A DNA stretch of 26,989 bases from Macrostomum lignano (Eukaryota): positions 1-26,989 of the forward strand of contig NIVC01005074.1 of NCBI GenBank assembly GCA_002269645.1, given 5' to 3'. A program made the position numbers and the translations under genes. Shown piece by piece: positions 1 to 18,951 of this stretch (positions are counted from its first letter, which is position 1; the number at the start of each line of letters is the position of its first letter). The notes beneath the pieces are model-generated. The model searched no databases, was not told the origin of the DNA, and worked only from the letters and a program-made list of their open reading frames with translations.

Positions 1-12
1 TGTACTTAAAAT

Positions 13-390: not shown

Positions 391-413
391 ATTAGAAAAA
401 AAACCACAACCAT

Positions 414-694: not shown

Positions 695-892
695 TACATA
701 GAACTTTGAACTACACAGAACGGGCTCGTGGCGCAAGAGTCATACAGTGCATGCTCTCAAATGTCGTAACTATTCGCATCGGAACTTGACTTCTCGATAT
801 TATCCGGTATGTTAGGCGTAGGACGTCTCATCAACAGTATCAATTGACGGAATTATTGGGCTGAAATGTAGGCTGAGGCCCGTCCTTGCTAT

Positions 893-1317
893 TTAAAACG
901 CCTTTTTTCTTGGTCGCTTGACTCGTTGAAGCTGCTCTGACTCCTGAGACGCGTCATCTACGACAGACAAACCAGAATGCGATACAAATAATAGCAAGCG
1001 ACTACAAGGACAGAGCACCACGTATCCGATGATGTTCGAAATCGAAAATATCCTGTTTTTGAATAACCGATTTAGCAAGTTTTTCGCCTTCAGTACTATT
1101 ATCTACAGGATCCGACACTGCCGCATAGCTGTGGTGTTGAAACAGGCGCGAGATTCTTTAAAAGCTGTGCACTTTTTAGCATTATAAATTGCCATATAGT
1201 GAGTTGGACAAGCAGTAAGAGCAGGCGCAGTAAGAATCGTAATAGAAATATCCAGATTCAATTGCACAATAAACTTTTTCTGATATTCTTGCAGTCATTT
1301 TGGAAGTTTTTCGGCAC
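893..1317 (-). pseudogene. Receptor paralog F, exon 2: Cys-rich domain, stalk and TM, broken by several frameshifts (pseudogene or sequence error); 3' end uncertain, may extend to ~750
   Basis: After acceptor ttttcgattgcag| the frames read VPKNFQNDCKNIRKSLLCN / ESGYFYYDSYCACSYC / ...YNAKKCTAFKESRACFNTT / ... / ISNIIGYVVL / VLVVACYYLYR. This has the same YYDxxCxCxxC, Cx8C and NxT motifs as the intact paralogs. Confidence 0.7.
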
Positions 1318-1377
1318 CTGCAATCGAAAAATTATTTAACGAGCCTATTTTTAGAGCTGAATTTTAATTCGGTCTTT

Positions 1378-1733
1378 TTTTATTAGAGGCAGGGGGTTGT
1401 GTGCACCCTGGCGCACTTTAAGCGACATAGGCACACAACCGGCGAGAGGCATTACTGCCATTCGCCGACTCCCCTGAGCAGGCATACAAGCGCGCGATAC
1501 GTACGCAGGCACACACTCACACAGAAGTGTACAGCGGCCCACGACTTTATTTATATTTAGGCATGTACACTTCACAGTGTCTTGGGGGTTGGCTCTCAAG
1601 GCCGTTAATTGCACGAGCAGAGCCAAGCCGAGATTCCAATTCAGCCCCAAATTAATGTGACTGCACTTGGAATCGAGCCTGGGTCGCTGGCACACCAGAG
1701 CAGCTGCGCTACCGCTGGGCTACGGCTCCCCTA
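1378..1733 (-). mobile_element. tRNA-derived SINE family 2, copy 1, with a perfect 13-bp target-site duplication
   Basis: Box A tagcccagcgg, box B-like gctcgattcc, A-rich tail. TSD taattcggtcttt at 1365-1377 and 1734-1746. Highly similar to 20634-21000. Confidence 0.85.
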
Positions 1734-2220
1734 TAATTCGGTCTTTCGCATCGCGTAAATTCTCTAAATAATGACATCTTTTCAGTCATAAGGAGGCATC
1801 GAGGAGAGAAAAGTCACCCGAAAAAAAGTCATGTGTCGCTTCAGAGTCGTTGCAGGTAAACACAGGTAAAATCGGAAAAGAAGTGAATCTAAAACGACTA
1901 CATGTCACGGTACAATTCGTCAAATAGTGGACTCTTTAATAGTGACTCCAGGGCCTTAGAGTCGTATCTGAGGCGGGCCAGAGCCTTGCATCTGACTCAC
2001 TTTATGAATTAGAATCGCACTTCGCGTTCATAAAACTCTATATTTAGTCTACTTGAGTTAGTAAAATGTCAAACACAAAAACGACTATTAGACGACTTTT
2101 GCGACTCTTTAAAGATACGGCAACTCATGTGATATGCGCTCGTGACTCGACTTAACAGTCGCCTCTCCGTCGCATTACAGTCGTTTGAGTCGTTAAAAAG
2201 TCAAAAGAGAAGCCCGAGTC

Positions 2221-2596
2221 CAGGGGCGTCGCCATAGATTTTATGGTGGGGGGGGACAAAAGCCGAGAATTCTAAATGTACATTATTTCCGAATCGGTGT
2301 TGTCATTGATTTTTTTGAAACCGCAGGCACTCATTTTAGCGCCGCATGCTCTCATTTTGGCGCCGCAGGCACTCATTTTGGCGCCGCAGGCACTCATTTT
2401 GGCGCCGCAGGCACTCATTTTGGCGCCACAGGCACTCATTTTGGCGCTGCAGGCACTCATTTTGGCGCCCTGAAGCAAATTGACTATTGATTTCCATAAC
2501 GGATCAACAAGGTGGGAGGGGGACAAATGGACAAGCATCGGGATGTCCCCCATTGCTTCTACTGGGGGGGGCACTTGTCCCACCCCCCCAGTGGCG
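2221..2596. mobile_element. Probable non-autonomous TIR element (MITE) with truncated right end and an internal 21-bp tandem repeat
   Basis: Left end caggggcgtcgcca..ggggggggaca. Right end tgtcccacccccccagtggcg lacks the expected acgcccctg. About 7 copies of gcaggcactcattttggcgcc at ~2322-2470. Confidence 0.55.
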
Positions 2597-2810
2597 TCAG
2601 TGCGTCCCGACATTCTTGAAAAAGTTGTTGCCGAGGATTCAATGCTAAATGGCACGAATATTCCATCACCAATGGCTCGCAATCGACGCAAATACAGTCG
2701 CCATTGTAATACTGCCGATCCAAATCGCATTCTGGCGGGAGGTAGCAATCTAACTGGTTTTTAGGCGTGTCTACAAAACATCTGGCTCGGTTGCTTGACA
2801 ACAGGAACAG
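2559..2810 (-). pseudogene. Partial duplicate (fragment A) of receptor gene B: end of signal peptide plus most of the Cys-rich domain, no TM
   Basis: 2594-2811 aligns without gaps to gene B (14 substitutions in ~217 nt by hand count). Reads LFLLSSNRARCFVDTPKNQLDCYLPPECDLDRQYYNGDCICVDC...ECRDALT, then runs into MITE sequence and stops at 2559. Confidence 0.85.
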
Positions 2811-2848
2811 CTATATTATAAATAGGTCCAGTTTTGAAATTTATTCAC

Positions 2849-2929
2849 CTTTACATCCTGCTGATCATTGCCGAAACACCGACAGATAATAACAGCAGCG
2901 GCAATTAGCAGCTGAATTTGAAGATGCAT
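2849..2929 (-). CDS. Signal-peptide exon (exon 1 of paralog F), absent from the ORF track
   Basis: ATG at 2929, MHLQIQLLIAAAVIICRCFGNDQQDVK, then donor aag|gtgaat in phase 0. This phase matches the acceptors at 1317 and at 2810. Confidence 0.65.
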
Positions 2930-3576
2930 CTGATCAGCTGATTAGGGAAGATTTAAAATAGTAAGATGCCGCTACTACTCTTAAAAGTAGTAATTCATAG
3001 CGAAATCGTATCTGAAATGAGCGACAAAGGTGGCAGATAAATTTGAAACTGATTAACTGAAAAAAACTGCGATTATCCTACTCACAAGTAGCCAAATAAA
3101 AAGTGTCAAGTCAAAAAACCGGTAAATGACTACAAAAATAGACTAAAATTTACAATCTGGCAGGTGCATGGATGTGTATTTTGTTTGAAATGGCAACTGC
3201 TAAAAAGATAAAAATGTGGGAAAATTTCAAGTTGGCAAACTCGTCTTTTTTGCCTGAGAGATTTACCAGCGCAGTAAAACATGAACTCGCGGCACGTTAG
3301 TAAAGTGCATGGCTAAGCAGAGAATTAAAACTATTGTAAAATTTATATTTAAACTCGCAATAGACAGTTTGTCAAGGCTCTTGAGATAAAGCAGAAGTCA
3401 AACGGAATTTACACTACTAATAAGTAGAAATGTAAAAAGAAAGAAGCAAAATTTAAATATATTGTAGAATTGTTTTAACAGTTGGCATTATCTGTAATTT
3501 TTCGTTGATTAAAAGACTATAATATATTCGTTAAAGTTTGAGTACACTAAATAAATTATTACGACAAGGAGCCTTC

Positions 3577-4493
3577 AGTCAGTCAGGCAGTCAGTCAGTC
3601 AGTCAGTCAGTCAGTCAGTCAGTCAGTCAGTCAGTCAGTCAGTCAGTCAGTCAGTCAGTCAGTCAGTCACCCACTCACTCAAGTCAGTCCAGTCAGTCAG
3701 TCAGTCAGTCAGTCAGTCAGTCAGTCAGTCAGTCAGTCAGTCAGTCAGTCAGTCAGTCAGTCAGTCAGTCAGTCAGTCACCCACTCACTCAAGTCAGTCC
3801 AGTCAGTCAGTCAGTCAGTCAGTCAGTCAGTCAGTCAGTCAGTCAGTCAGTCAGTCAGTCAGTCAGTCAGTCAGTCAGTCAGTCAGTCAGTCAGTCAGTC
3901 AGTCAGTCAGTCAGTCAGTCAGTCAGTCAGTCAGTCAGTCAGTCAGTCAGTCAGTCAGTCAGTCAGTCAGTCAGTCAGTCACACCACTCACTCAAGTCAG
4001 TCCAGTCAGTCAGTCAGTCAGTCAGTCAGTCAGTCAGTCAGTCAGTCAGTCAGTCAGTCAGTCAGTCAGTCAGTCAGTCAGTCAGTCAGTCACCCACTCA
4101 CTCAAGTCAGTCCAGTCAGTCAGTCAGTCAGTCAGTCAGTCAGTCAGTCAGTCAGTCAGTCAGTCAGTCAGTCAGTCAGTCAGTCAGTCAGTCAGTCAGT
4201 CAGTCAGTCACCCACTCACTCAAGTCAGTCCAGTCAGTCAGTCAGTCAGTCAGTCAGTCAGTCAGTCAGTCAGTCAGTCAGTCAGTCAGTCACCCACTCA
4301 CTCAAGTCAGTCCAGTCAGTCAGTCAGTCAGTCAGTCAGTCAGTCAGTCAGTCAGTCAGTCAGTCAGTCAGTCAGTCAGTCAGTCAGTCAGTCACCCACT
4401 CACTCAAGTCAGTCCAGTCAGTCAGTCAGTCAGTCAGTCAGTCAGTCAGTCAGTCAGTCACCCACTTACTCAAGTCAGTCAGTCAGTCAGTCA
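3577..4493. repeat. (CAGT)n microsatellite, ~0.9 kb, interrupted about 8 times by cacccactcactcaagtcagtc
   Basis: Seen directly. It accounts for the SQSV-repeat ORF 3538-4656. Confidence 0.97.
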
Positions 4494-4879
4494 CAAAGCC
4501 AAACAAATAAGATTGCATTCAGTATCAACTGAAAGAAAACAATCAATAATTTCGCTAATGAAGAAAGGAATGCAAGGCAATACTGTACAAAGATACAAAG
4601 ACAGATGTCTGTACATTACTAATGTCAGTGTCGGTATAACAAAATGCGTCAGTTGAATCACGCAATTACTATGAGCATGACAAAAACATTGATGACAGCT
4701 GAGTACTGTTGGCATCGGTGTAGAAAAGCAGAGACACAGAGATCTGCTTTAAAAAATCCATTGGCAGGGCAACTGATTGAAATATTACTATAGGTCTTGT
4801 ACTAGAGTACATTATTGTGGTTAGAAATATTAATTCCTACTTTATATAACTTTATTTCTATGAATATTGTCGTCTTATG

Positions 4880-5345
4880 CGAGATCCGGGATATATGATA
4901 GAATAGCTTTGAGATTTTATGTGAAATATTAGAGATCTCAAATGAAATGTTAAAAATCTCATGAAAGATAATTAAGACTTCATATGAGATTAGAGATCTC
5001 AAGTGAGATAAGAGATCTCATGTGAGATTAGAAATCTCATGCGGAAGATTCGAGATCTCATATGAAAGATTAGAAATCTCATGAGATATTTGAGATCTCA
5101 TATGAAAGATTAGAAATCTCATGAGATATTTGAGATCTCATATGAAAGATTAGAAATCTCATGAGATATTTGAGATCTCATATGAAAGATTAGAAATCTC
5201 ATGAGCAATTAGAGACTTTATGTGAGATTAGAGATCTCATGCGAGAGATTCGAGATCTCATATGAAAGATTAGAAATCTCATGAAAGATAATTGGGACTT
5301 CATGTGGGATTAGAGATTTCATGTAAGATTCAGAATATCATATGT
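4880..5345. repeat. Minisatellite, ~40-bp unit made of palindromic gagatctc/gaaatctc subunits
   Basis: gagatctcatatgaaagattagaaatctcatgagatattt is near-perfect at ~5052-5205 with degenerate flanks. Confidence 0.85.
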
Positions 5346-5525
5346 AGGAGATTTCAGCTCAGTTTAAAGTACAAAAAGTAACCATTTCAAATACAGCAAA
5401 AAACCTGAATGATTTAATTATTGAAAAGATAGTGAGCAGACAGAAAAACTACAAAGTCAGTCTGAGAACAATATAATAAGCGGAGCTGATTATGCACATA
5501 AACAGACATGTCACATGATGTAGGA

Positions 5526-5862
5526 TCACACTTTTGATAGGATTTGGTCGCGGCACTTTAACCCATAAGCATTAGTAGCCGCAGGCGCCAGCATAGGCGC
5601 AGACAGATGCAGCAGGGGATTCAACTGCCTAACGATTGAGCACACGGACATGCTAGACGCTGGTATGTTTGGCGCGAGAGCCTCCGATGAGGCACCGTCT
5701 TGTACTGAGCAGTTCTCGCTTAACCACTTCGAGCAACGTTGAGCGCCTTTGGATAAATATCTGCTGGACTGGTCTGGGCACTTTATTGGCTGACAGGTTC
5801 TACAGGGGCCGTTGCAGCCGCTGTCGGTGCCCCCGGAGTGCTCCACGATGGGGGACTGCTCT
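5526..5862 (-). CDS. Receptor gene B, exon 2 (cytoplasmic tail, ends ...QILSKV*)
   Basis: Acceptor aacccacctgcag| at 5863. 1 nt plus 112 codons fits the phase-2 donor at 7576 and joins into ORF 5526-5846. Spliced CDS is 891 nt (296 aa). Confidence 0.7.
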
Positions 5863-5865
5863 CTG

Positions 5866-7560
5866 CAGGTGGGTTAATTATCAGAGATGATTGTTATCTG
5901 ACTCAGGTAGGTTAATTATCAGATATGATTGTTATCTGACTCAGGTAGGTTAATTATCAGATATGATTGTTATCTGACTCAGGTAGGTTAATTATCAGAG
6001 ATGATTGTTATATCTGACTCGGTAGGTTAACTATCAGAGATGATTGTTATATCTGACTCAGGTAGTTAATATCAGAGATGATTGTTATCTGACTCAGGTA
6101 GTTAATTATCAGATATGATTGTTATATCTGACTCAGGTAGGTTAATTATCAGATATGATTGTTATCTGACTCAGGTAGGTTAATTATCAGAGATGATTGT
6201 TATCTGACTCGGGTAGGTTAATTATCAGATATGATTGTTATCTGACTCAGGTAGGTTAATTATCAGATATGATTGTTATCTGACTCAGGTAGGTTAATTA
6301 TCAGATACGGTTGTTATCTGACTCAGGTAGGTTAAATATCAGAGATGATTGTTATCTGACTCGGGTAGGTTAACTATCAGAGATGATTGTTATCTGACTC
6401 GGGTAGGTTAACTATCAGAGATGTTTGTTATCTGACTCAGGTAGGTTAATTATCAGAGATGATTGTTATCTGACTCAGGTAGGTTAAATATCAGAGATGA
6501 TTTTTATCTGACTCAGGTAGGTTAATTATCAGAGATGATTGTTATCTGACTCAGGTAGGTTAAATATCAGAGATGATTGTTATCTGACTCAGGTAGGTTA
6601 ACTATCAGAGATGTTTGTTATCTGACTCAGGTAGGTTAATTATCAGAGATGATTGTTATCTGACTCAGGTAGGTTAAATATCAGAGATGATTTTTATCTG
6701 ACTCAGGTAGGTTAATTATCAGATATGATTGTTATCTGACTCAGGTAGGTTAAATATCAGAGATGATTTTTATCTGACTCAGGTAGGTTAATTATCAGAT
6801 ATGATTGTTATCTGACTCAGGTAGGTTAATTATCAGATACGGTTGTTATCTGACTCAGGTAGGTTAAATATCAGATATGGTTGTTATCTGACTCAGGTAG
6901 GTTAATTATCAGATATGATTGTTATCTGACTCGGGTAGGTTAATTATCAGATATGATTGTTATCTGACTCAGGTAGGTTAATTATCAGATATGATTGTTA
7001 TCTGACTCAGGTAGGTTAAATATCAGATATGGTTGTTATCTGACTCAGGTAGGTTAATTATCAGATATGATTGTTATCTGACTCGGGTAGGTTAATTATC
7101 AGATACGGTTGTTATCTGACTCAGGTAGGTTAAATATCAGATATGGTTGTTATCTGACTCGGGTAGGTTAATTATCAGATATGATTGTTATCTGACTCAG
7201 GTAGGTTAATTATCAGATATGATTGTTATCTGACTCAGGTAGGTTAAATATCAGATATGGTTGTTATCTGACTCAGGTAGGTTAATTATCAGATATGATT
7301 GTTATCTGACTCGGGTAGGTTAATTATCAGATACGGTTGTTATCTGACTCAGGTAGGTTAAATATCAGATATGGTTGTTATCTGACTCGGGTAGGTTAAT
7401 TATCAGATACGGTTGTTATCTGACTCAGGTAGGTTAAATATCAGATATGGTTGTTATCTGACTCGGGTAGGTTAACTATCAGATACGGTTGCTATCTGAC
7501 TCAGGTAGGTTAAATATCAGATATGGTTGTTATCTGACTTAGATAGGTTAATTGTCAGAT
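5866..7560. repeat. 38-bp minisatellite, ~44 copies, filling the gene B intron
   Basis: Unit actcaggtaggttaattatcagatatgattgttatctg with recurring variants and no spacers. Confidence 0.97.
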
Positions 7561-7576
7561 AAGAGATATTACTTAC

Positions 7577-8130
7577 TCATCGAGTTCATCAGTAGACTCA
7601 ACTGACTCGTTTAATCCACCCTGACGCCCGACTCCGCTCCGGCCGCGAGCGCAGAACCGGATTATTATGACCGTAAATAGTATGGCCAATGCAAAAAAGC
7701 AGGCTAATAAACTGAATATCAAAGCCATATTGGAGTTCGAAGGATGCTGAACTGTTATTGATGAAGACAACGTCGCAGTCGTGGTTGACATTTCAGTTGA
7801 AGTATGCTGAATACGCTCAGTGGTAGCGCCTGCCACTGGCGATAAGCTTACATTTCGCATAGTTGCCTGACAATAGCCCAGCGTCAGTGCGTCTCGACAT
7901 TCTTGTAAAAGTTGTTGTCGAGGAATCAATGCTGAATAGCACGAATATTCATTTACCAATGGCTCGCAATCGACACACATACAGTCGCCATTGTAATACT
8001 GCCGATCCAAATCGCATTCTGGCGGGAGGTAGCAATCTAACTGGTTCTTAGGCGTGTCTACAAAACCGCTGGCTCGGTTGCTTGACAACAGGAACAGCAA
8101 CAATATGCTTAGTAGCATTCGTTGATCCAT
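7577..8130 (-). CDS. Receptor gene B, exon 1: signal peptide, 8-Cys domain, S/T stalk, TM, start of tail (single-CRD TNFR-like)
   Basis: ATG 8130 MDQRMLLSILLLFLLSSNRASG. Domain CYLPPECDLDRQYYNGDCMCVDCEPLVNEYSC...CRDALTLGYC, sequon NVS, TM ALIFSLLACFFALAILFTVIII followed by R. Canonical donor ga|gtaagt at 7576. Confidence 0.8.
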
Positions 8131-9010
8131 GCTGTTTAAATCAATCAATTGCCGCTAAGCCGTCACGTATTGGACATTTGCGTTGACGAAAGAAAAAGCC
8201 TCAACAAAAGCTCTTCTTGTTGTTAATGTTGACGACGGCTGAAGAGTAGACAGAACGAGAGGCTGGGTGAAGTGAAAAGGTTTCTAACAAAAATGATGAG
8301 CCTAGCATATAATCTGTAGCTATTGCGTTGGTAAGAGCGAGCCAGAGAGGTAGAGACTATATAGGAGTTGCAGCGGCAGAGAAGAGCGGTGAAGACGCAG
8401 TAGTAATAACAGAAAAAACTGCTTACGAAGTTCCCTCGAAGACACTTTGTCAACAGCATCTCTAAAAGAAACAGCTCTCTATTCTAAAATTAACTATTAG
8501 ACATGGTCCCCGCTACTAAAAATAGAACACTTGGTCTAGCTGTAAGCTTAAAAACGAAGCGGGTGATGCTATAATATAATACAAACTTCTTCTACTTATA
8601 TAGCGTAATAACTGAACTCTAAAGTGGAACGATGCTTATTTTAACAGAACCCCCCCTTCCCCAAAGCCCAAGTGCGAGTTGATTCACTGCTAGCTGGTAA
8701 CTACGCAATTGAAAGTAAAGTAGCGGAATTTATCTGGCGCAGATGCTAATAAATATGATAAATTTTTAGAGAAACAAAAACGTTTATTATTGCAGCGAGA
8801 GAAGTTATAATGCGCGATTAACAGTAAAATAGGGGCGCTATTATTAAATATTATAACAAATTTTGTAAATTTCTACAATGTAAAAGAGCGCATTGTGAGC
8901 TAGAAGACAAAAGATAAAAAGATAACTATTGATTTGAATATGCGGTTGGCGATGATTCTTCGATAGCAAAACCTTAAAGCAATACAATATAGTTAAAACA
9001 ACACGAAACG

Positions 9011-9748: not shown

Positions 9749-10848
9749 TGCGACTGTAAATAATTTTAAGACTTTGAGATTGCGGTAGCACTTTACCCGA
9801 AGGGGGCTAGCTAGTGTGTCCCGGGGCCGGCTTGACTAATGATTCTGCGTCTTTGTCTGAGCTGCCTATCGTTCAAATAAAACACAATTATGCGAACGAC
9901 ATTGTAATTTTAACAGTTAAATAAAGACGTAAGTAGGCACATTGTAAAAAGGGAAAAATGGAGGGAGGGGCACAAAAAGGGATATCAACTGATTTAAACA
10001 AGCGTTTGGAGGTGATTTGACAATAGAGCAATCTAAAACAATATACGAGCGTATTATACGAAGGAGTATGGATATGAGAACCACTGTTAGCAACAGAGCG
10101 TACTGATTTTTATAGCAAAAACTGCTCAAAATTTGCTTGCCTGCCAGTCTCTGAGGGCCACATTTAAGGGGGGGGGGCGCCAGTCTAAGGGGCGAAGTCT
10201 CTTTGGGGGGGGGGGCGCTAGTCTTGGAAGGGGGCGACAGTCTCGGAGGGGGGGGACGCTAGTCTCCGAGTTTCTGGGAGACAGGAAGACAGTCTCTGCG
10301 GGGAGGACGTTGTGAAATACTCTGTCTTCCAGCAGGGACTCGCTCTAGTATTGCTTTTTCGATCCAATAAACTTTTGAAGCCGCTATTGATCGCTAGATG
10401 ATCTTCGTAGTACTGATAGAAAGAGGTTAGGCCCTTAAAATATTACTGGCAAGCTTAATATGTGCTTTCACTGATGGGTACAAACGATGCCGTTAAAATA
10501 CCAATGACAATGACAAGCTCAACTGTGTGACGAATATAATATTCCTTAGTAAAAGTTTTCATATATGAATTGTTTCATTGCTAATCCGAGAGTCTTGGGT
10601 TCAGGTTGCCAACCGGAACGACGACCCAATTTCTTGTTTTTTTTCATCTATTTTTCTCGGAGTGACTCATTAAATTGCTTGATACTATCTGCTGGATATC
10701 AAAGCGATCTAGAAAGCTAGCGACAAGAAACTTGCTGATAATAAGCGTTAAAATAGGCTTCGAAGCACTTAGCCTTTGGCGTGGCGAAAAATATTGTGCA
10801 CTCTTCACTATTGTGCATTCCTATTGAGGAATGTTCAACCAACGATGA

Positions 10849-11661
10849 TTAAAATTTGACAGGGTTTAATTTGCTTTGCATGAACTGTTGCTCAGGCCGC
10901 CTAATCGCGTCAAACTGTTCATCACCATTCTGCGCACAGAGAGGCAAAGGTATAACTGGTGCCGCAACCTGCGGTTCCTGATCGGAAGTTAGAGCTTCCG
11001 TTGCAGTTTCAGCAGCCGGTTCATGCCAACCTTCGGAGGTGAGTTTAGTTGACGGTGACGCCGCCTCCGACTGAGACAGAGACTGTGCATCAATAGCTTG
11101 AGTATCTCCAGACTCAACTGCAGAAACGTCTTCGCCACTGTAGCATTGAGTAGCCCAATACCGAATTTTAAAGGACAGAAGTTGACTAGATCGATTGAGT
11201 CGAAATACTAGCAAGGCAAAGCAAAATGAGACAAACAACAAGCCGAAAGCGATAGCAACCGGTTGAATTCCAAACGCTAAAGAGCGGTTATGCAACGGGA
11301 GGTCATTGCTTGGAATCATAGGCCGAGCAGAATTACCATTTTCAAATTTCTCTGGAAGACCAAGTCTTGATGGCAAAACCGATTCATTACAATAAGAATA
11401 CCTCTTAATTAGAATACAGAATTCGTCTTTGGAACTATGCGTGCTAGTGCAAGATTGGAGGACATCGTCGCAAGACTGACAATTGCATAGAAAGTCGTGG
11501 TACTGATTGGCCAAACAATGTACAAGGTTCTGCATAGATTCACTGCAATCTTCGCGACTTCGTGGAAAGCTGCCAATTGATTTAACTATGTTGAATTTAA
11601 AGTTTACAATCCATAGCCATAGTTGCTGATAATAAATAAGTTGATTGAAAAAGTTGCGCAT
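10849..11661 (-). CDS. Receptor gene C, 270 aa, single-CRD TNFR-like type I membrane protein
   Basis: Domain CSESMQNLVHCLANQYHDFLCNCQSCDDVLQSC...CILIKRYSYC, sequon NES, TM VAIAFGLLFVSFCFALLVF followed by R, acidic S/A/E/Q tail. The signal peptide is atypical, so the start is less certain. Confidence 0.78.
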   Translation of the reverse strand: MRNFFNQLIYYQQLWLWIVNFKFNIVKSIGSFPRSREDCSESMQNLVHCLANQYHDFLCNCQSCDDVLQSCTSTHSSKDEFCILIKRYSYCNESVLPSRLGLPEKFENGNSARPMIPSNDLPLHNRSLAFGIQPVAIAFGLLFVSFCFALLVFRLNRSSQLLSFKIRYWATQCYSGEDVSAVESGDTQAIDAQSLSQSEAASPSTKLTSEGWHEPAAETATEALTSDQEPQVAAPVIPLPLCAQNGDEQFDAIRRPEQQFMQSKLNPVKF

Positions 11662-11898
11662 TTTTTGTACAAATCTGTTGACTTTACAGACCTTTGCGGT
11701 ATGGCTCGAGCGCCTGAAAATTCGTTAAAAACATAGCTAATTGTAAAGGTAAATGAGCAAGCGGTATGGTAGTGTGTGTGTGTGTGGACTCCCTAATCAT
11801 TAGAATTCAATGAGATGTGTTCAACTTTAAGTGGGACAGCTTCGATATGGGAAAATGAGAGAAAAACAGTGATGCTTAACAAAGCATCAGAAGACTCG

Positions 11899-13080
11899 TT
11901 TGCCAATGCAATGGAGCTTTTGTCTATGGTAGCAAGGCTATGGCATTTAATTTGGTCCAACAAGCATCAATTTGGCCCAACAAGCACCAATTTGGTCCAA
12001 CAAGCACCAATTTGGTCCAACAAGCATCAATTTGGTCCAACAAGCACCAATTTGGTCCAACAAGCATCAATTTGGTCCAACAAGCACCAATTTGGTCCAA
12101 CAAGCATCAATTCGGTCCAACAAGCATCAATTCGGTCTAACAAGCACCAATTTGGTCCAACAAGCACCAATTTGGTCCAACAAGCACCAATTTGGTCCAA
12201 CAAGCATCAATTTGGTCCAACAAGCACCAATTTGGTCCAACAAGCATCAATTTGGTCCAACAAGCACCAATTTGGTCCAACAAGCACCAATTTGGTCCAA
12301 CAAGCATCAATTTGGTCCAACAAGCACCAATTTGGTCCAACAAGCATCAATTCGGTCCAACAAGCATCAATTCGGTCTAACAAGCACCAATTTGGTCCAA
12401 CAAGCACCAATTTGGTCCAACAAGCATCAATTTGGTCCAACAAGCACCAATTTGGTCCAACAAGCACCAATTTGGTCCAACAAGCATCAATTTGGTCCAA
12501 AAAGCACCAATTTGGTCCAACAAGCATCAATTTGGTCCAACAAGCACCAATTTGGTCCAACAAGCACCAATTTGGTCCAACAAGCACCAATTTGGTCCAA
12601 AAAGCACCAATTTGGTCCAACAAGCATCAATTTGGTCCAACAAGCACCAATTTGGTCCAACAAGCATCAATTTGGTCCATAGCTTTATTTTCAACTGTTG
12701 CGAATGAGCAAGATCAGCCCCAGAATTGTGTATGATATGCTAGGCTGTTGAACCAATGTCATTGGCTTGCGATCGAAGCGCTCGACAGAGGTGAACACCC
12801 AAAGGACATTGCAAGGCTGTTCAATGTAAAAGAAAGATGGTTTACAGCATCCAGCAGCGCTTTGAAACCACTGCCGGCAGAGGTCGCCTGCGAAAAGAAA
12901 GATAATTCTATGTTGACGTTGCAGAAAATGTAGCAGAATTTGAAGAAACAGTTCCAGTTGGTTATCAGATTTTTGACTATCGGTAGAGCTCTGGAAAAGC
13001 GTTTGGACCAAATTGATGCTTGTTGGACTAAATTAAATGCCGCTCTGACAGCCTCGCTACCATAGACAAACATTGGCAAA
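11899..13080. mobile_element. Degenerate TIR element (possible Tc1/mariner relic) with an HTH-like remnant
   Basis: 11899-~11975 and ~13002-13080 are imperfect inverted copies (tttgccaatg..tttgtctatggtagc..gcatttaatt.gtccaacaagcatcaatttgg). Internal ORF 12748-12933 contains AIEALDRGEHPKDIARLFNVKER, like a transposase N-terminal helix-turn-helix. Confidence 0.5.
11949..12679. repeat. 20-bp minisatellite, ~36 copies
   Basis: Unit aatttggtccaacaagcacc or aatttggtccaacaagcatc. It accounts for the SNKHQFGPT-repeat ORFs. Confidence 0.97.
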
Positions 13081-13845
13081 TGTATCTTGGATTAACTTAA
13101 ATGCGCGTAAATTTAAATAAGCCGCAAAAAAGCTATATTTGATCGAACTATGAGCTAATTATACCTTTGCTGAAATTGAAATGGTTAGGTCCTACAATGA
13201 ATGGCGAAATGATTAACACGTAATTAGAACTTTTACCACAATTTTAAAGGAAATATATACGGCTGTAATTTTATTTACAAAATTTACGAATATATGGTAT
13301 TATGATAGATACTTCTAACCTGCAAGAGTATATGTAGGTTAAAAATATTACAATGGGAAAATCAGTTAAGGTTAGTGTTTGTTTGCATAAATAGAGAGTA
13401 CGAGCGTATTTCGACTATATATCGAAAGCTACACGTCATCTTCACATATATAAAAAGTGCGTAAATTATCTGTACATCACAAATTGTGCCCCTAAAGAAG
13501 AAAAATAATGCAAACATTCGAATCAAAACAAAAAAACATTTCGCTTCAAAAGTAGCAGTAATTAGTGATATTGGAGACTGCTAAAAGTACGAATTTCTGG
13601 ACCTTTACGGCGTGTAAATTTAGTACCAAGGACGACTTAGGAATTGCAGGAAACTTCATTTCCTACAAACCATCTGAAAGGCTGGTCTTTAATACACTAC
13701 TGAGTTAGGAACTGTTCGCTAAAAGGATAACAAGCTTCTTATACGCCATAAAACTTGCTTAGTACAAACTGGATATCCATAAAGCGAGCACAGGTCGGTC
13801 AAACGTCTTCCATAGTTAATATGTGATAAAATTGAAACACAAAAA

Positions 13846-14240
13846 TTCGAAGAGTGCCTGGAAAGTTCTGACACTTTTGATTCTAGAGCAAAAACGTTAG
13901 CAGCTGCAAGCACAACTTTGGTATCATTTTTAATGAATTCAGTCGCGTGTTTTTTGGTCATTTCATTCAAAAGTTATGTGTGAAAAACCATCGCAGTGCC
14001 CCTAAAATACCCCCCCCCCACTTCATTCCTCAACTTAAGTCTACCGCGGCGTAGCTAAGTTGCGTCACTCGCAAGATTGAGAGACTTTACCTGCACTCTC
14101 AAAAATGGCGACCACAAACGGAATCTTCTGTAATGGCGAATTTTCGATGTTATAAATTTTGTTATAAATTTTGAATGAAATGACCAAAATACAGGCGACT
14201 AAACTCTATAAGTGTCAGACTTTTCCATACACCCCTCGTA
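13846..14240. mobile_element. Mariner-like MITE with long imperfect terminal inverted repeats
   Basis: Right end reverse complement tacgaggggtgtatggaaaagtctgacactt (mariner-type terminus with TA) matches left end ttcgaagagtgcctggaaagttctgacactt at 24/31. Inner inverted pair at ~13941-13972 and ~14171-14201. Confidence 0.6.
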
Positions 14241-14940
14241 CACGTAGGCTGAAATTTTAGCCACAACTCATTGCACAGCTGCTCTATTATTGACTGGTAA
14301 AACTGTAAAACTATTCAACATGCTGAGCACGGGTTATACAACGACGTCTTAAGTAGAAGGATGGGAAAAATACACTACGGAGATAGGAAGTTTTCATTTT
14401 TTCAGCACGAAAATTGCTATTGCTTTTGATAGGAGGCCGATCCAGTGTTCATCTTTTGATATGTTGTGCCTTTCTTATTGCTCTATCGATATTATCGATA
14501 TTCATATTGAATACTTTGAATATTGAATATTGAATACTTAATCTTAGGAGGCAGATCCAGTGTTCATCTTTTGATATGTTGTGCCTTTCTTATTGCTCTA
14601 TCGATACATAGTAGGTTACGAATGGCTATGATTGGCTGAAAAATATGCACCATATTCGATAAAGCAATAAGAAAGGCACAACACATCAAAAGATGAACAC
14701 TGGATCTGCCTGGCAGAAAAACCTGCCTTCTCTAAACATTGCAAAGAAACGAGGTTTCCCATCCTTCTACTTGAGTTGTCCTTGGGGTTATATATAACTA
14801 TTTGAACGCATTTGTCGCATACAACTTGCTGATTGAATATCACAGGGAAAATTAACCGAAAAGTTGTGCAATTTGGTTTAGCAGTTTTACTATTCAATAG
14901 ATCAACCTATGCAAGGGGTTGTGGATAAAAGTTGGGCTCG
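14241..14940. mobile_element. Fold-back (palindromic) element, ~700 bp, with an internal duplication
   Basis: The ~60-bp block gatccagtgttcatcttttgatatgttgtgcctttcttattgctctatcga occurs at ~14438 and ~14554 and inverted at ~14655-14712. aagtagaaggatgggaaa (~14352) is inverted at ~14757. Outer arms are also weakly inverted. Confidence 0.6.
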
Positions 14941-15450
14941 TTCACAGCAACTTTTCGTAATTTATTAACGAAATATCAGCAAATGAACAGATAATACATT
15001 AAATAACTATTGCTACACAAATAATTATTCAATTTATTACAAAATGAAAACAATTTAGAATAAAATTAGCACCTGATAATTTATAAGTAGCATAAAACTG
15101 ATTAAATATGGCGCTTCATATTGTTAAAAAATTACCATAAGATACACAATATCAACATATAAGCGGAATGTGTACATATGGATTGTTTTACTCGTAAATG
15201 GCGCTAAGAATAAATCAATTTGTCCAAAAATACGCACGTGTTTTTAGAAAAATTGCCAAGAACAGACACAACCATAACTTGTAGCCATAAAATCACGCGG
15301 TTACCTCGTGGATTTGTTTCTTTGCTTTGCGCTCTGGTCCGCCTTCATTGCACTAGGATAAAAAGTGAGTTTGACATATTAGCTTTGCCTCAGATCATAG
15401 AATAACAAAGGCTTCCATTCTTGAATAAGTGTTGAATAAATTTGGCATCC

Positions 15451-16323
15451 TCAAAAGCTACTAGTGGCATTGGCACTAGCAGATGCTGCCACTTTTTTGC
15501 GCGCATTGTCTTGATCGCGCCTGCTTCCAGGCGTAGCAGACTGTTGCTCGGTAGTGCCACTAGCTGGAATGCCTGGCGTACTGCCTGCCAGGACTGGATC
15601 CATCACGTCTAGTAGTTGCGCAGGCGGTGTCGTCTGAGTGACTCCGGCGCTTAGGCTGCGCGCTAGCAGCGGTCGGGACGACTGAGTCTGCTCTGGAGGC
15701 GATGACGGTACCGAAGCGGCCCGACCGAATATGCGCCATTGTTGCATAAACTTTGGCAATCTCTTTGAGTATGTACGGCCAAGAAGCAGTGCTGCTACTA
15801 GTGCTGCGAAAATTATAATTAATACCAAACCGATAGCAAGAAAGACAACATAATTTGGCTGCTCATAGTTTGTAGTTGACTGATAATTGTAGGCAGCTGC
15901 AGCATTATTATTAGTGGACGCAAATCTACTAGCAACCGAAGCGACACTGTTCAATGTGGAAAGATGGGTGATGGTGGAAGCTTCACGTGTTGTACTAGCG
16001 CTTGTAGAAGGCAAAGTAGTAGTTTTGGTACTGTTGTCGCAGTAATACAATTCTTTTAATTTTGAACAAAACTCGTCACTAGGACGTGGCTGACTGCAAT
16101 GCTGCCAAGTGGCCTCACAATGTACACAAGTGCAGTGGACATCGTAGTACTCATTTTCGGAGCAATTTAGCATGTTCTGAGTTTGCCGGACGCACTCGTA
16201 CCGACTCATTGGGTAGCTCAGTGGATTTTTTACACTCATCGACAGAACCAAATTAGACATCAAGTTGATCTGAATCAGAGTTACAAAAGTCAGAAATTTC
16301 CAAATTTGGTTATTTGCTGCCAT
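15451..16323 (-). CDS. Receptor gene D, 290 aa, single-CRD TNFR-like type I membrane protein
   Basis: ATG 16323, hydrophobic leader IWKFLTFVTLIQINLMSNLVLS. Domain CVRQTQNMLNCSENEYYDVHCTCVHCEATWQHC...CSKLKELYYC, sequon NST, T/S-rich stalk, TM VVFLAIGLVLIIIFAALVAALLLG followed by RTYSKR. Confidence 0.85.
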   Translation of the reverse strand: MAANNQIWKFLTFVTLIQINLMSNLVLSMSVKNPLSYPMSRYECVRQTQNMLNCSENEYYDVHCTCVHCEATWQHCSQPRPSDEFCSKLKELYYCDNSTKTTTLPSTSASTTREASTITHLSTLNSVASVASRFASTNNNAAAAYNYQSTTNYEQPNYVVFLAIGLVLIIIFAALVAALLLGRTYSKRLPKFMQQWRIFGRAASVPSSPPEQTQSSRPLLARSLSAGVTQTTPPAQLLDVMDPVLAGSTPGIPASGTTEQQSATPGSRRDQDNARKKVAASASANATSSF

Positions 16324-18012
16324 CACCAGACTTCTCCAGGGAAGAGAGCGCTATCGCAGCCCGTTTTAGCTCACATGCATGAAATTTTAGCAAGGCATTT
16401 AAAGAGAGCATATAGACGACATTGATATACAAACAAGTAGGGGACACATTTAAAAATCATTTCGTTAAGATGAACAGAAACTGTAACTGAAAAAGTACAA
16501 AAAATCAACTCTTTACCAGTACTATTTCTGCATTAAAATTAAAAAGTCTACCATTTGTCATCTTGCCTTATGAGACTATAAGGGCCTATAATATTTTGTA
16601 GCCATAAATACTTATTTAAAGCAGTGAATTAAATTTTAAAGACATCAATATTAAATTTATGACGTTTATTTTTACAAGCAAAATTTACAATGTTTACAAC
16701 AGATCAAGTGGCGCTTGGAAGTAATAATTTAAAATCAATAAAATAACGTGCAAACAAAAAAGACAAAAAACAACTGCGGATATTAAATAAGCTTCTTTTG
16801 ATTTTGATTAATTGCTTTCGTTATTTCAAACACAATAGTTTTTCGAAAACATATAAAAAGTAATTCTCCAGCTACACACTAGCATTGAATGCCAAGTATA
16901 ATATAAGCAGATATGAGAGAGCATATGCAAATAGGACCGGAACGAAAACGCACAATTTAATATTTTGACATGGGCTCGCAATATGTTGTGCTTCGAATGT
17001 ACAAAACGGAATAATATTTGCCGGTGAAAAAATGACGCATTATTAGATTAATATATGCCAATCCCACCGCCTAAAACATTGGGTTCATCGCTGCGAGTGG
17101 TCTGGTAGCGCATTAGGCGTTGTCTTTTAAATGCCATAGCGCGAACGGGGTGACGCAACACCTAGCACCATTTTCCTGGCCACGCTGGAAACCTGACCAT
17201 CGCTATTAACAACAACAGCAACATTGATAGTCAATTAGCAGGTTTTAAGTCACACTTGGTAATTTAGCTGTTTTAAAAACTAGAAAGAAAGACGCATAAA
17301 GACATTTAAATTTTTTAAGTACAGTGTACATTTTCTTTAGTGATATTTATCTGGTGCTGTTTAAAACAGAACAAGGCTTTTTAAAAATTCAAAAATTAAG
17401 AATTGGAATACTTCACACGATATTTTGTTGAGGCAGAGTGACGCAAAGGATGATCACAGATATATAAATAAAAATGTTGCAGAAATATTGACGATTACTA
17501 CTTTAAGCATTGGGGACACAAGAAGCAGAATTTGGATTTTTGAATGGATTTTACAGCTGCTAATCTGTGTTATTTCAAGTGATCTTAAATCTCTTTCTCT
17601 GCTTACTATAAAGTTTGTCAACTTAAGCTTATAAAGTGGAGCCCAATACACAAATGATACGTCATTATGCTCACAGTGACACCAGGAAGCTAGGTTGGGC
17701 GAAAAAGTGACAAAAAATTGGACCTAGGATAGGGGAGAACAAGCAAAGGGATAATTTGGGACACCACTTTATTAGCTTAAGTTTACATAATAGTTCCTAA
17801 TTATACGTCGTCTTTTTGTGGTGTTTTTTATTATGATGCATACAGAAATTTTTTGTCTGCTAAAAACTTTCTTTAACAAATACGATTGTTTTGTTCAAAG
17901 ATGGTTAATTTTACAGATTACAGACCTAGGTTGGAGCGGCTGTTGTATTATTCGTTATGACAAATTAACAATTCATACAAAAACGTTTTAAATTTTCGAA
18001 TGACCCGACAGT

Positions 18013-18789
18013 TCAGGCATTGGCTTGCGGAGCAGGGTCAGGAGTGTCTGGTATGTCGACCACTACCGGCTCATAATCCGAGCCATTTTCCACATGCTGC
18101 TGCTGCTGCTGCTGCTCATCAAGCAGAGGAGATACCGATTCAATTACAGTAGGCTCACTGAGCACGCTTACTCTGCCGTTAGTATTGTTCTGCTGGATCG
18201 CGCTGTTGTTTTCAAAAGCTGCTAATGGCGGCTGAGTATGTGCTTGCCGACTCCTAGGCAACAGGCGACAAAAGCTAGTAAACTTCACTCTTATCACGTC
18301 GGCGTACTTCAATCGAATGAACACCGCTATTCCGATTACAACAACTATGATAATTAGAATAGGAATTGTTATCTTCACTGCAGTGGACAGACCGTCATAG
18401 ACTTTGCCGTTGCTGTCGGTAGTTAACAACAGATTATCAGTACCTCTGCTAGTAGACTCTACGCCTCTCGCACTGGTGGTAGGAGTGAAACTACTAGCAT
18501 TGCCACTGCTTGTAGTATTCAGTGCGCAATAGTTTAGCTCACGATATTTCGGACAAATTAAGTCATTAGGATTTGAAAAGCATCTTTGTTTCACAATGGT
18601 GCAGCTCTGACACTCGCATTGCGAGTTAAAATAATTCTCGCTTTGATTCGAGCAAGCTTGAAGCAATCTTACATTAATTTTATCCTTGCAAATGTTGAAA
18701 CTGAAAGGATATGACACTTCCTGTGCTACGGAATCAAGTAGCTGGCATACAAAGATTATTGTTGACAAAACGATAATCCGGCAATCCAT
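18013..18789 (-). CDS. Receptor gene E, 258 aa, single-CRD TNFR-like type I membrane protein
   Basis: ATG 18789 MDCRIIVLSTIIFVCQLLDSVAQ. Domain CKDKINVRLLQACSNQSENYFNSQCECQSCTIVKQRC...CPKYRELNYC, sequon NTT, TM ITIPILIIIVVVIGIAVFI followed by RLK, polyQ/acidic tail. Confidence 0.85.
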   Translation of the reverse strand: MDCRIIVLSTIIFVCQLLDSVAQEVSYPFSFNICKDKINVRLLQACSNQSENYFNSQCECQSCTIVKQRCFSNPNDLICPKYRELNYCALNTTSSGNASSFTPTTSARGVESTSRGTDNLLLTTDSNGKVYDGLSTAVKITIPILIIIVVVIGIAVFIRLKYADVIRVKFTSFCRLLPRSRQAHTQPPLAAFENNSAIQQNNTNGRVSVLSEPTVIESVSPLLDEQQQQQQHVENGSDYEPVVVDIPDTPDPAPQANA

Positions 18790-18951
18790 AGGGCCATAAA
18801 AAAGCAATAAAGTAATTTTTGTATTACCAAATAATTGCTGCAGAATAAATAAACAAATATTAATTAGAAAAATAAGTATAATTCTCCATCAGAAAATTTT
18901 TTATCCACTACAATAAAAAATACCATTTTTCACTCCTAAATAATACTATCT

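What the first reader, a model, noticed from the sequence alone, without database searches (positions are those of the whole stretch)
893..18789. Tandem cluster of divergent single-CRD, TNF-receptor-like genes
Seen: four open genes (B, C, D, E), one frameshifted copy (F) and one fragment (A), all on the minus strand and head-to-tail. They share signal peptide, 8-Cys domain, NxS/T, stalk, one TM with basic stop-transfer residues, and a disordered tail. Outside the Cys, aromatic and sequon positions the paralogs share little sequence. Established: BCMA, TACI and BAFF-R have short CRDs and no death domain, and Drosophila Grindelwald has one CRD. Inference: this is a lineage-specific, fast-diversifying receptor family under birth-and-death evolution (immunity, recognition or JNK signalling). 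I do not recognise it as a described family, and simple BLAST may miss it.
Basis: partly seen in the sequence, partly recalled or inferred. Interest (0 to 1): 0.9.

Follow-up and report, generated by a model that had tools for sequence, protein, structure and literature searches.

The report
Flatworm tandem cluster of TNFR-like receptors
This stretch of the flatworm Macrostomum lignano genome carries five neighbouring, species-restricted genes for small cell-surface proteins whose single cysteine-rich domain most resembles the ligand-binding domain of the vertebrate TNF-family receptors BCMA and TACI, so they are candidate extra receptors for this worm's unusually numerous TNF ligands, although that link is suggestive and not proven.

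Summary
The cluster is real. On the minus strand, head-to-tail, lie five paralogous genes (my labels E, D, C, B, A). Each encodes a signal peptide, one 8-Cys domain, an N-glycosylation sequon, a stalk, one TM helix with a basic stop-transfer, and a disordered tail. A 240-bp partial copy of B (F) sits inside A's intron. The window matches Macrostomum lignano (assembly Mlig_3_7). The "frameshifted copy" is an assembly artefact: the window is a redundant contig with indel errors at its end, and A is intact on three other contigs.

No relatives outside M. lignano turned up among 1.84 billion representative proteins. Pfam, PDB sequence search and Foldseek all give nothing. A targeted profile comparison does pick out human BCMA: P about 1e-4, all six BCMA cysteines aligned, best of 36 Cys-rich sequences, and 0 of 250 Cys-fixed shuffles reach the score. 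TACI CRD1 is second; Grindelwald does not match. AlphaFold (pLDDT 86) predicts a hairpin followed by two helices. UniRef names one fused B+A model "TNFR-Cys domain-containing protein".

Between haplotypes the ectodomains are under purifying selection (omega about 0.3), and gene content is constant. These are old, maintained paralogs, not rapid birth-and-death. Verdict: a new, uncharacterised, probably TNFR-like single-CRD receptor family. Function is inferred only.

The parts
18013..18789 (-). Gene E, single-exon CDS of 258 aa. Signal peptide, 8-Cys domain (18505-18714), NTT/NAS sequons, S/T stalk, TM, 100-aa tail.
   Evidence: ORF. Features. Identical copy on NIVC01001809.1 and an 89%-identical allele, P0002 = PAA65778.1.
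15451..16323 (-). Gene D, single-exon CDS of 290 aa. 8-Cys domain at 16018-16218.
   Evidence: ORF. P0001 sits on three contigs and is identical at nucleotide level in the sister haplotype.
10849..11661 (-). Gene C, ORF of 270 aa. 8-Cys domain at 11368-11571, including a DxL tripeptide (YHDFLC). Weak signal peptide. No annotated protein.
   Evidence: The sister copy differs by 2 nonsynonymous and 3 synonymous changes.
7577..8130 (-). Gene B exon 1: signal peptide, 8-Cys domain (7834-8064), stalk, TM and start of the tail. A GTAAGT donor overlaps the in-frame TAA stop.
5863..7576 (-). Gene B intron, made almost entirely of a 38-bp minisatellite (5866-7561, 44.6 copies).
   Evidence: The sister haplotype has an intron of only about 600 bp.
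5526..5862 (-). Gene B predicted exon 2: 111 more tail residues, including C-x3-C-x2-C-x4-C-x14-C-x7-C.
   Evidence: Gene models P0003 and P0007. CAG acceptor and reading frame. 2 synonymous and 3 nonsynonymous differences between haplotypes.
2595..2834 (-). Fragment F: truncated copy of B exon 1 (clear homology from about 2810). It has no start codon, carries an in-frame stop at its 5' edge, and ends before the eighth Cys. It lies in A's intron.
   Evidence: tblastn 82.5% identity. Alignment. 5 synonymous and 14 nonsynonymous codon differences. Present in L005 and L006, absent from L002.
2849..2929 (-). Gene A exon 1 (signal peptide MHLQIQLLIAAAVIICRCFGNDQQDVK), followed by a GT donor.
757..1317 (-). 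Gene A exon 2: 8-Cys domain, short stalk, TM, tail. In the window it is broken by 9 indels that are assembly errors.
   Evidence: Intact proteins P0005 and P0006.

Best explanation
Shown: the window carries a five-gene tandem array (E, D, C, B, A) from Macrostomum lignano. The genes encode old, maintained paralogs of a species-restricted type I membrane glycoprotein. Each has a signal peptide, one domain of about 55 residues with eight cysteines, an N-glycan site, a stalk (S/T-rich in E, D and B), one TM helix, and a disordered cytoplasmic tail with no known domain.

Inferred: the domain is a divergent TNF-receptor-type CRD of the BCMA/TACI kind. That means an A1-like beta-hairpin carrying the conserved Y-[YFH]-[DN], then a helical second module. 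Cys 2, 4, 5, 6, 7 and 8 correspond to the six BCMA cysteines, which predicts disulfides 2-4, 5-7 and 6-8. An extra N-terminal helix would be tied on by Cys 1-3.

Inferred mechanism: each paralog sits on the cell surface, held away from the membrane by its stalk. Through the hairpin and first helix it binds one or a few of the worm's multiple trimeric TNF-family ligands. Ligand-driven clustering of the tails recruits adaptors through short linear motifs, because there is no death domain. Divergence of the paralogs would partition ligand specificity.
For: Real genes:
- Paralogy statistics.
- The same five genes occur on every assembled copy of the locus.
- The ectodomains are under purifying selection between haplotypes: 8 nonsynonymous against 7 synonymous changes, omega about 0.3.
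- A, B, D and E have protein records in an annotation built from RNA-seq transcript assemblies.

TNFR-type CRD:
- hhalign of the family profile against human BCMA gives Prob 56%, P 1.1e-4 and 39-42 aligned columns. All six Cys align, as do the CSxNEY[YF]D stretch and the post-Cys N-x-S sequon.
- BCMA and TACI CRD1 rank first and second among 10 TNFR CRDs and 26 decoy Cys-rich sequences.
- 0 of 250 Cys-fixed shuffles of BCMA reach the real score, z 7.1. For TACI CRD1, z is 3.8.
- The result survives leaving out any paralog. Leaving out both D and E still gives P 0.005.
- D, C and E come within one or two residues of the PROSITE TNFR pattern.
- AlphaFold2 of the E domain (pLDDT 85.8, pTM 0.69) and of the D domain (pLDDT 66.6) gives the same order of elements: N-terminal helix, hairpin, two helices. 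From my own knowledge of the BCMA structures, this matches hairpin plus helix-loop-helix.
- UniRef names the fused B+A model A0A1I8IZQ0 'TNFR-Cys domain-containing protein'.

Context:
- M. lignano has 4 genomic plus 6 transcript-derived TNF ligands, but only one NGFR-like TNFR was reported (PMC7519573).
Against: - Every unbiased test is negative. Pfam gives no TNFR_c6, BCMA or TACI hit even at E up to 10. The PDB profile and sequence searches give no TNFR. Foldseek on the confident model returns nothing from PDB, and on the D model only Fn14 at E=6.
- A nominal P of 1e-4 would not survive a search over all known families.
- The strict PROSITE pattern fails.
- The DxL motif essential for BAFF/APRIL receptors (PMC5865128) is present only in C.
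- The second-module loops are much longer than in BCMA, and there are two extra cysteines.
- Grindelwald, Fn14, BAFF-R, TACI CRD2 and the TNFR1 CRDs score no better than decoys.
- The separately modelled A and B UniRef entries are named 'Uncharacterized', so the signature match is marginal.
- A TRAF2-type motif (SDQE) occurs in only 2 of the 5 tails, and no TRAF6 motif occurs.
- A preprint already counts 16 Wengen-like and 1 Grindelwald-like receptors in M. lignano, so ligands may not lack receptors.
- BCMA and TACI are otherwise known only from vertebrates (my knowledge), so convergence is plausible.
- There is no expression or binding data.
Confidence: 0.45

Rival explanations
1. The 8-Cys domain is a new fold unrelated to TNFRs, and its cysteine spacing and hairpin motif resemble BCMA by convergence. 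The proteins are lineage-specific surface molecules that work in adhesion, cell-cell or gamete recognition, or as mucin-like coat proteins. They bind something other than TNF ligands.
For: - No hit in Pfam, PDB sequences or Foldseek, even with a pLDDT-86 model.
- Eight rather than six cysteines, and an added N-terminal helical segment.
- No relatives outside one species.
- Stalks rich in S/T, as in mucin-like proteins.
- No conserved signalling motif in the tails.
Against: - The BCMA match is specific. It beats 26 decoys, and Cys-fixed shuffles never reach it.
- It is robust to leave-one-out.
- There is an independent TNFR-Cys label on one database entry.
Confidence: 0.37
2. TNFR-like, but not signalling receptors. 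They would be membrane-bound decoys or co-receptors that buffer TNF ligands or present them to the canonical NGFR-like receptor. The tails would serve only for trafficking.
For: - The tails are poorly conserved. E's tail has omega about 1.1 and a 9-residue length difference between haplotypes.
- There is no death domain and no consistent TRAF motif.
- B may exist as a short-tailed isoform, because the stop codon overlaps the splice donor.
Against: - Tails of 70-117 residues are retained in four genes.
- A shared acidic S-D-x-E element occurs in several tails.
- Nothing tested here separates a decoy role from a signalling role.
Confidence: 0.1
3. The ORFs are not functional genes. They would be decaying duplicates or chance ORFs in a repeat-rich region, and the similarity would be a remnant of one ancestral gene.
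For: - C has no annotated protein and only a weak signal peptide.
- Fragment F is clearly a dead partial copy.
- The region is full of minisatellites.
Against: - All five ORFs are intact on several independently assembled copies.
- Coding divergence between haplotypes (dN about 0.006, dS about 0.018 on the ectodomains; D identical) is lower than the divergence of the flanking DNA, which is 91-98% identical to the sister contig.
- All eight Cys are kept despite 62-74% sequence divergence.
- RNA-seq-derived gene models exist for A, B, D and E.
Confidence: 0.03
4. They are Shisa-like (STMC6-type) single-pass adaptor proteins that regulate other receptors through PY-motif tails.
For: The general layout is similar: an N-terminal Cys-rich domain, one TM helix and a disordered tail.
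Against: - No PPxY motif in any tail.
- No Pfam Shisa hit.
- The cysteine pattern has no CC pair and a C-x-C-x2-C core instead.
Confidence: 0.03

Closest known systems
BCMA (TNFRSF17) and TACI (TNFRSF13B) cysteine-rich domains
   Same: - Type I membrane protein with one functional small CRD and no death domain.
- C-x11-14-C-x2-C start, with an aromatic pair and D/N in the hairpin (CSxNEY[YF]D).
- All six BCMA Cys align, as does the N-x-S sequon right after the last Cys.
- The predicted order is hairpin then two helices.
- hhalign P 1.1e-4.
   Different: - Two extra cysteines and an extra N-terminal helical segment.
- The hairpin turn is two residues shorter and contains a Cys.
- The second-module loops are x6-8 / x8-13 / x8 instead of x3 / x7-8 / x3.
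- The DxL ligand-contact motif is kept only in C.
- There is a long S/T stalk.
- No hit by Pfam BCMA/TACI models, PDB search or Foldseek.
- The host is a flatworm, whereas BCMA and TACI are known only from vertebrates.
Grindelwald (Drosophila single-CRD TNFR)
   Same: An invertebrate type I protein with a single 8-Cys CRD, no death domain and a disordered tail.
   Different: The Cys spacing is unrelated: 4,6,6,2,3,11,3 against 9,9,1,2,6,9,8. hhalign P 0.65. It ranks below most decoys.
Fn14 (TNFRSF12A)
   Same: A single small CRD with a C-x12-C-x2-C start. It was the only TNFR listed by Foldseek, for the low-confidence D model (E=6, TM 0.35-0.40).
   Different: There is no profile similarity above decoys. 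It was not recovered with the confident E model.
Platyhelminth NGFR-like TNFR (SmTNFR family, PMC7519573)
   Same: It is the TNF-receptor candidate already described in M. lignano and belongs to the same superfamily, if the inference here is right.
   Different: That receptor has several canonical CRDs detectable by standard HMMs and a predicted death domain, with one copy per species. The genes here have one atypical CRD, no death domain, and form a five-gene array.
Shisa-like / STMC6 single-pass adaptors
   Same: An N-terminal Cys-rich domain, one TM helix and a disordered tail.
   Different: No PY motifs, a different cysteine pattern and no Pfam match.

Membership tests
TNF receptor superfamily (TNFRSF) | Match to a curated TNFR CRD sequence model (Pfam TNFR_c6, BCMA-Tall_bind, TACI-CRD2) | tested here: not met
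   hmmscan at E up to 10 gave no TNFR-type family. This covered the four full proteins, the four isolated CRDs, and A and the fused B+A model.
TNF receptor superfamily (TNFRSF) | PROSITE TNFR/NGFR signature | tested here: inconclusive
   The strict pattern PS00652, written from memory, fails in all five. D, C and E match a version relaxed by one or two residues. The UniRef name of the fused B+A model is 'TNFR-Cys domain-containing protein', which implies an automatic signature match. The separate A and B entries are 'Uncharacterized'. The PROSITE profile itself could not be run.
TNF receptor superfamily (TNFRSF) | CRD fold built from an A1-type disulfide-closed hairpin plus a second module, recognisable by structure comparison | tested here: inconclusive
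   The AF2 models show a hairpin plus two helices. Foldseek found no TNFR with the confident model and only Fn14 at E=6 with the weaker one.
TNF receptor superfamily (TNFRSF) | Binds a trimeric TNF-family ligand | not testable with these tools
   The ligands exist in M. lignano (PMC7519573). Co-folding and binding assays were not available.
TNF receptor superfamily (TNFRSF) | Cytoplasmic death domain or TRAF-binding motifs | tested here: inconclusive
   No death domain. The TRAF2 major motif SDQE occurs in C and A only, P-x-Q-x-x-D occurs once in D, and there is no TRAF6 motif. Such short motifs occur by chance.
BAFF/APRIL receptor subgroup (BCMA, TACI, BAFF-R) | Six-Cys A1-D2 CRD alignable to BCMA/TACI | tested here: met
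   At a nominal level only. hhalign P 1.1e-4 to 1.3e-4 with all six Cys aligned. BCMA is the top of 36 sequences, with shuffle z 7.1, and the result is stable to leave-one-out. It would not be significant in a database-wide search.
BAFF/APRIL receptor subgroup (BCMA, TACI, BAFF-R) | DxL motif at the hairpin tip, essential for ligand binding (PMC5865128) | tested here: not met
   Present only in C (YHDFLC). D has DVH, E has NSQ, B has NGD and A has DSY.
Grindelwald-type single-CRD TNFR | Sequence or profile similarity to the Grindelwald CRD (PDB 6ZSY sequence) | tested here: not met
   hhalign P 0.65, below most decoys. The Cys spacing differs.
Shisa-like / STMC6 | Shisa-type cysteine pattern and PY (PPxY) motifs in the tail | tested here: not met
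   No PPxY in any tail and no Pfam Shisa hit.

The most novel reading that the evidence does not exclude
The five genes are true, very divergent TNF receptors of the BCMA/TACI (A1 plus helical module) type and are the cognate receptors of the expanded M. lignano TNF ligand set. This would place the origin of that compact CRD type, so far known only from vertebrate B-cell biology, before the protostome-deuterostome split. It would also give a genetically tractable flatworm system with several ligand-receptor pairs that standard domain searches miss.
Probability: 0.2. Interest if true: 0.75.

Novelty: new variant of a known kind. Interest (0 to 1): 0.55.

Why it matters
Published surveys give platyhelminths one NGFR-like TNF receptor each, yet M. 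lignano has about ten TNF ligands (PMC7519573). A hidden family of single-CRD receptors would help explain that imbalance. It would also show that standard HMM surveys undercount invertebrate TNFRs. M. lignano is transgenic-capable, regenerates and is transparent, so ligand-receptor pairing and downstream roles in wounding, stem-cell control and immunity could be tested directly. If the BCMA link turns out to be convergence, the result is still a new four-disulfide ectodomain fold with a confident model and no structural neighbour. On the practical side, the finding shows how indel errors at contig ends in a redundant long-read assembly can imitate pseudogenes and birth-and-death evolution.

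Tried and rejected
- phmmer of D against 5.8 billion clusters returned only D itself.
- A profile of four CRDs against 1.84 billion representatives returned only the E-like and B-like M. lignano proteins plus one spurious repeat protein.
- The word-indexed search with the CRD alignment found no candidates. With the full-length alignment it found only the same M. lignano proteins.
- Pfam on full proteins, on isolated CRDs and on A and the fusion gave only sub-threshold TM or low-complexity noise.
- The PDB profile search gave LIM (E 0.1) and schistosomin (E 0.7), judged to be chance. P0007 against PDB gave nothing relevant.
- Foldseek of both models against PDB, and of the E model against BFVD, gave no hit better than E 1.3.
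- A four-sequence BCMA/TACI/Fn14 profile gave a weaker signal (P 0.014, 5-6 of 300 shuffles reach it) than BCMA alone, because Fn14 and TACI CRD2 dilute it.
- Grindelwald, EGF, LDLa, Kazal, PSI, SMB, Ly6, saposin, ShK and other modules showed no similarity above background.
- I first read A as a pseudogene and took it as evidence for birth-and-death. I rejected this after the indel analysis.
- Looking for expression data by gene identifier found no main-text mention. In supplementary tables only Mlig000476.g1 and .g5 appear; at 1614 nt they are probably the neighbouring helicase.
- ARAGORN and Rfam found no RNA genes in the window.

Full report
**Origin of the window.** The window is eukaryotic. 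Proteins nearly identical to its ORFs are encoded on contig NIVC01001619.1 of GCA_002269645.1. Papers identify that accession as the Macrostomum lignano Mlig_3_7 assembly, and the source names say the same. The assembly is known to be highly redundant because of the karyotype of the sequenced line (PMC5730564).

**What is in the sequence.** I label the genes in order of transcription on the minus strand.
- Four intact ORFs: E 18013-18789, D 15451-16323, C 10849-11661, and B 7577-8130.
- They are paralogs. tblastn inside the window gives D-C 1e-12, D-E 6e-7 and B-D 3e-3. CRD identities are 26-38%.
- The invariant positions are eight cysteines and one tyrosine. Spacing is C-x5-11-C-x9-11-C-x-C-x2-C-x6-8-C-x8-13-C-x8-C.
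- Each protein has an N-terminal hydrophobic segment (weak in C) and an N-x-S/T sequon right after the last Cys.
- The stalk is 43-63 residues long and 37-38% S+T in E, D and B.
- A strongly hydrophobic 19-mer is followed by R/K residues. The cytoplasmic tail has no recognised domain.

**Gene A.** The sister contig carries an intact 212-aa gene with two exons. Exon 1 encodes the signal peptide. Exon 2 encodes the CRD, TM and tail. In the window the same gene is exon 1 at 2849-2929 and exon 2 at 757-1317. Exon 2 there is broken by nine indels. A belongs to the family by position, strand, architecture and the Y-[YH]-D-S-Y-C-A-C-x2-C core. Its sequence similarity is weak: P is about 1e-3 against the profile of the four other paralogs.

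**Fragment F.** F (2595-2834) is a copy of part of B's exon 1, running from inside the signal peptide to just after the seventh Cys. It sits in A's intron immediately after exon 1. It has no start codon and no eighth Cys, and it is absent from the sister haplotype.

**The frameshifts in A are not biological.**
- Window 1-12947 aligns to NIVC01000221.1 with 6 mismatches and 65 indel events. Of those, 29 lie in the first 2 kb of the window.
- Window 12447-19323 aligns to NIVC01001809.1 with 0 mismatches and 4 gaps.
- The window is therefore a redundant contig of the same haplotype, with typical long-read indel errors at its end.
- That haplotype encodes an intact 211-aa A on two other contigs (P0006).
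- The same pattern appears elsewhere: gene C looks frameshifted only on NIVC01000552.1, within 1.5 kb of that contig's end.

The locus therefore has five intact genes and one dead fragment, flanked by an NDUFA9-like gene and a DEAD-box helicase gene.

**Evolutionary dynamics.** I compared the window haplotype with NIVC01001619.1.
- D is identical at nucleotide level.
- Summed over the genes, the ectodomains show 8 nonsynonymous and 7 synonymous differences, omega about 0.3.
- E's TM and tail have omega about 1.1.
- The counts are small, but they indicate constraint on the domain and none of the signs of rapid diversification.
- Gene content is the same in all assembled copies apart from F.
- The paralogs themselves are old, at 62-74% protein divergence.

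"Birth-and-death" therefore rests on F alone.

**Transcription.** A, B, D and E have GenBank protein records from an annotation built from RNA-seq transcript assemblies. C has none. I found no expression values for these genes.

**Gene B structure.** B's stop codon overlaps a consensus GTAAGT donor. Splicing to a CAG acceptor at 5863 adds 111 residues, as in gene models P0003 and P0007. The intron is essentially one 38-bp minisatellite.

**Relatives.**
- phmmer of D against 5.8 billion clusters found only D itself.
- An exhaustive HMMER profile search of 1.84 billion representatives found only M. lignano E-like and B-like proteins.
- A last profile search found the same set.
- Pfam gives nothing. 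PDB sequences give nothing.
- AlphaFold2 of the E domain with seven window-derived rows gives pLDDT 85.8 and pTM 0.69. Its elements in order are two short N-terminal helices, a beta-hairpin and two helices.
- The D model (pLDDT 66.6) has the same order of elements.
- Foldseek finds no neighbour in PDB or BFVD.

By any unbiased test this is an orphan family with a fold that has no recognised neighbour.

I first checked my recalled sequences of human BCMA, TACI CRD2, BAFF-R, Fn14 and Drosophila Grindelwald against PDB chains. All matched 100%. TACI CRD1 has no PDB chain, so its sequence remains from memory.
- hhalign of the MAFFT family alignment against BCMA gives probability 56% and P 1.1e-4. 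It aligns family Cys 2, 4, 5, 6, 7 and 8 with the six BCMA cysteines. It also aligns CSxNEY[YF]D with CSQNEYFD, and the post-Cys sequon with BCMA's CNAS.
- In a panel of 10 TNFR CRDs and 26 unrelated Cys-rich sequences, BCMA ranks first and TACI CRD1 second. The best decoy aligns over only 21 columns.
- Shuffling the non-Cys residues of BCMA never reaches the real score (0 of 250, z 7.1). For TACI CRD1, z is 3.8.
- The signal survives leaving out any paralog. Leaving out both D and E still gives P 0.005.
- Grindelwald (P 0.65), Fn14, BAFF-R, TACI CRD2 and the TNFR1 CRDs are no better than decoys.
- Independently, UniRef names a 472-aa fused B+A model 'TNFR-Cys domain-containing protein'. I take this to be an automatic PROSITE-rule name. 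The separate A and B entries are 'Uncharacterized', so the match is marginal.

**Weighing the evidence.** The BCMA/TACI similarity is specific and goes beyond cysteine spacing. A P of 1e-4 would still not be significant in a family-wide search, and Pfam, PDB and Foldseek do not confirm it.

Several features also differ from BCMA:
- The domain has two extra cysteines and longer second-module loops.
- Only C keeps the DxL motif that is essential in BAFF/APRIL receptors (PMC5865128).

My estimates are 45% for a true, divergent TNFR-type receptor, 10% for a TNFR-like decoy or co-receptor, 37% for an unrelated convergent ectodomain with another ligand, and the rest for minor alternatives.

**Context.**
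- M. lignano has four genomic and six further TNF ligands, and one NGFR-like TNFR was reported per flatworm species (PMC7519573).
- A later preprint counts 6 Eiger-like, 16 Wengen-like and 1 Grindelwald-like proteins in M. lignano. I could not establish whether that count includes these genes.

**Mechanism, with status marked.**
- Shown: type I topology features, a single conserved 8-Cys domain under constraint, a glycosylation sequon, a stalk, and tails without a domain.
- Inferred: hairpin and helix contact with the groove of a trimeric TNF ligand; disulfides 2-4, 5-7, 6-8 and 1-3; ligand-induced clustering and adaptor recruitment through short motifs (SDQE in A and C; S-D-x-E-like acidic elements in others); and partitioning of ligand specificity among the paralogs.

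**Novelty and score.** I could find no paper that describes the family. Database names are 'hypothetical' or 'uncharacterized', apart from one automatic TNFR-Cys label. I rate it a new variant of a known kind (a single-CRD TNFR-like receptor), with interest 0.55. It is a real, well-defined and testable family in a tractable model organism, but its identity rests on nominal statistics and its function is entirely inferred.

Noticed in passing
window 1-2000 and whole window: The window is a redundant small contig of the same haplotype as the ends of NIVC01000221.1 and NIVC01001809.1. It differs from them almost only by indels (6 mismatches against 65 indels, then 0 mismatches against 4 gaps). 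The indels are concentrated at the window start, and these assembly errors mimic pseudogenisation. Gene C looks frameshifted in the same way near the end of NIVC01000552.1 (L006 661-1466).
   Followed up: yes
window 5863-7576: B's intron is almost entirely a 38-bp minisatellite (44.6 copies). The other haplotype has an intron of only about 600 bp. The GTAAGT donor overlaps the TAA stop, so unspliced and spliced mRNAs would give short-tailed and long-tailed isoforms.
   Followed up: partly
window 5526-5862: B's predicted exon 2 encodes a second Cys-rich stretch (C-x3-C-x2-C-x4-C-x14-C-x7-C). Given the TM helix it would be cytoplasmic. Haplotype differences there are 2 synonymous and 3 nonsynonymous, so coding constraint is unclear. 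It could also be the segment behind the UniRef 'TNFR-Cys' label.
   Followed up: partly
window 2812-2848: Directly after A's exon 1 donor there is a pyrimidine-rich stretch ending in AG. This would put fragment F in frame with exon 1. No compatible downstream donor was seen, so use of F as an alternative exon is unlikely, but it was not excluded.
   Followed up: no
L002, L005, L006 and GenBank names: A-like proteins carry the transcript-unit prefix Mlig000476. The same prefix is carried by 1614-nt genes that fit the neighbouring DEAD-box helicase, classed 'Non-Specific' in positional RNA-seq. E-like and B-like proteins share the prefix Mlig030720. This hints at long or polycistronic, trans-spliced transcription units across the array.
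   Followed up: partly
window 20023-20331 and 21891-22799 (minus strand): An NDUFA9-like gene with at least two exons (Epimerase, 3Beta_HSD and NmrA Pfam hits) lies immediately upstream of E. The 388-aa model on the sister contig has the same Pfam hits.
   Followed up: partly
window 11-392, 2321-2469, 3575-4493, 4922-5344, 9021-9748, 11949-12679, 18950-19714: Every intergenic space of the array holds a different tandem repeat. These include (TCAG)n of about 226 copies, a GC-rich 24/48-bp array and a 20-bp array of 36 copies. Their copy numbers differ between haplotypes; for example, the 21-bp array has 7 copies here and about 40 on NIVC01001619.1. They create long spurious ORFs on both strands.
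   Followed up: partly
window about 1600-1700 and about 650-740; L002 15540-15620 and 16570-16650: Sequences that look tRNA-derived (possible SINE copies) flank A's exon 2. ARAGORN and Rfam report no tRNA in the window.
   Followed up: partly
PDB 9FDO and 9RT6: The family profile has a weak hit (E 0.7) to schistosomin, an 8-Cys snail peptide, over Cys 4 to Cys 8. I judged it to be chance; it scored among the decoys in the hhalign panel.
   Followed up: partly
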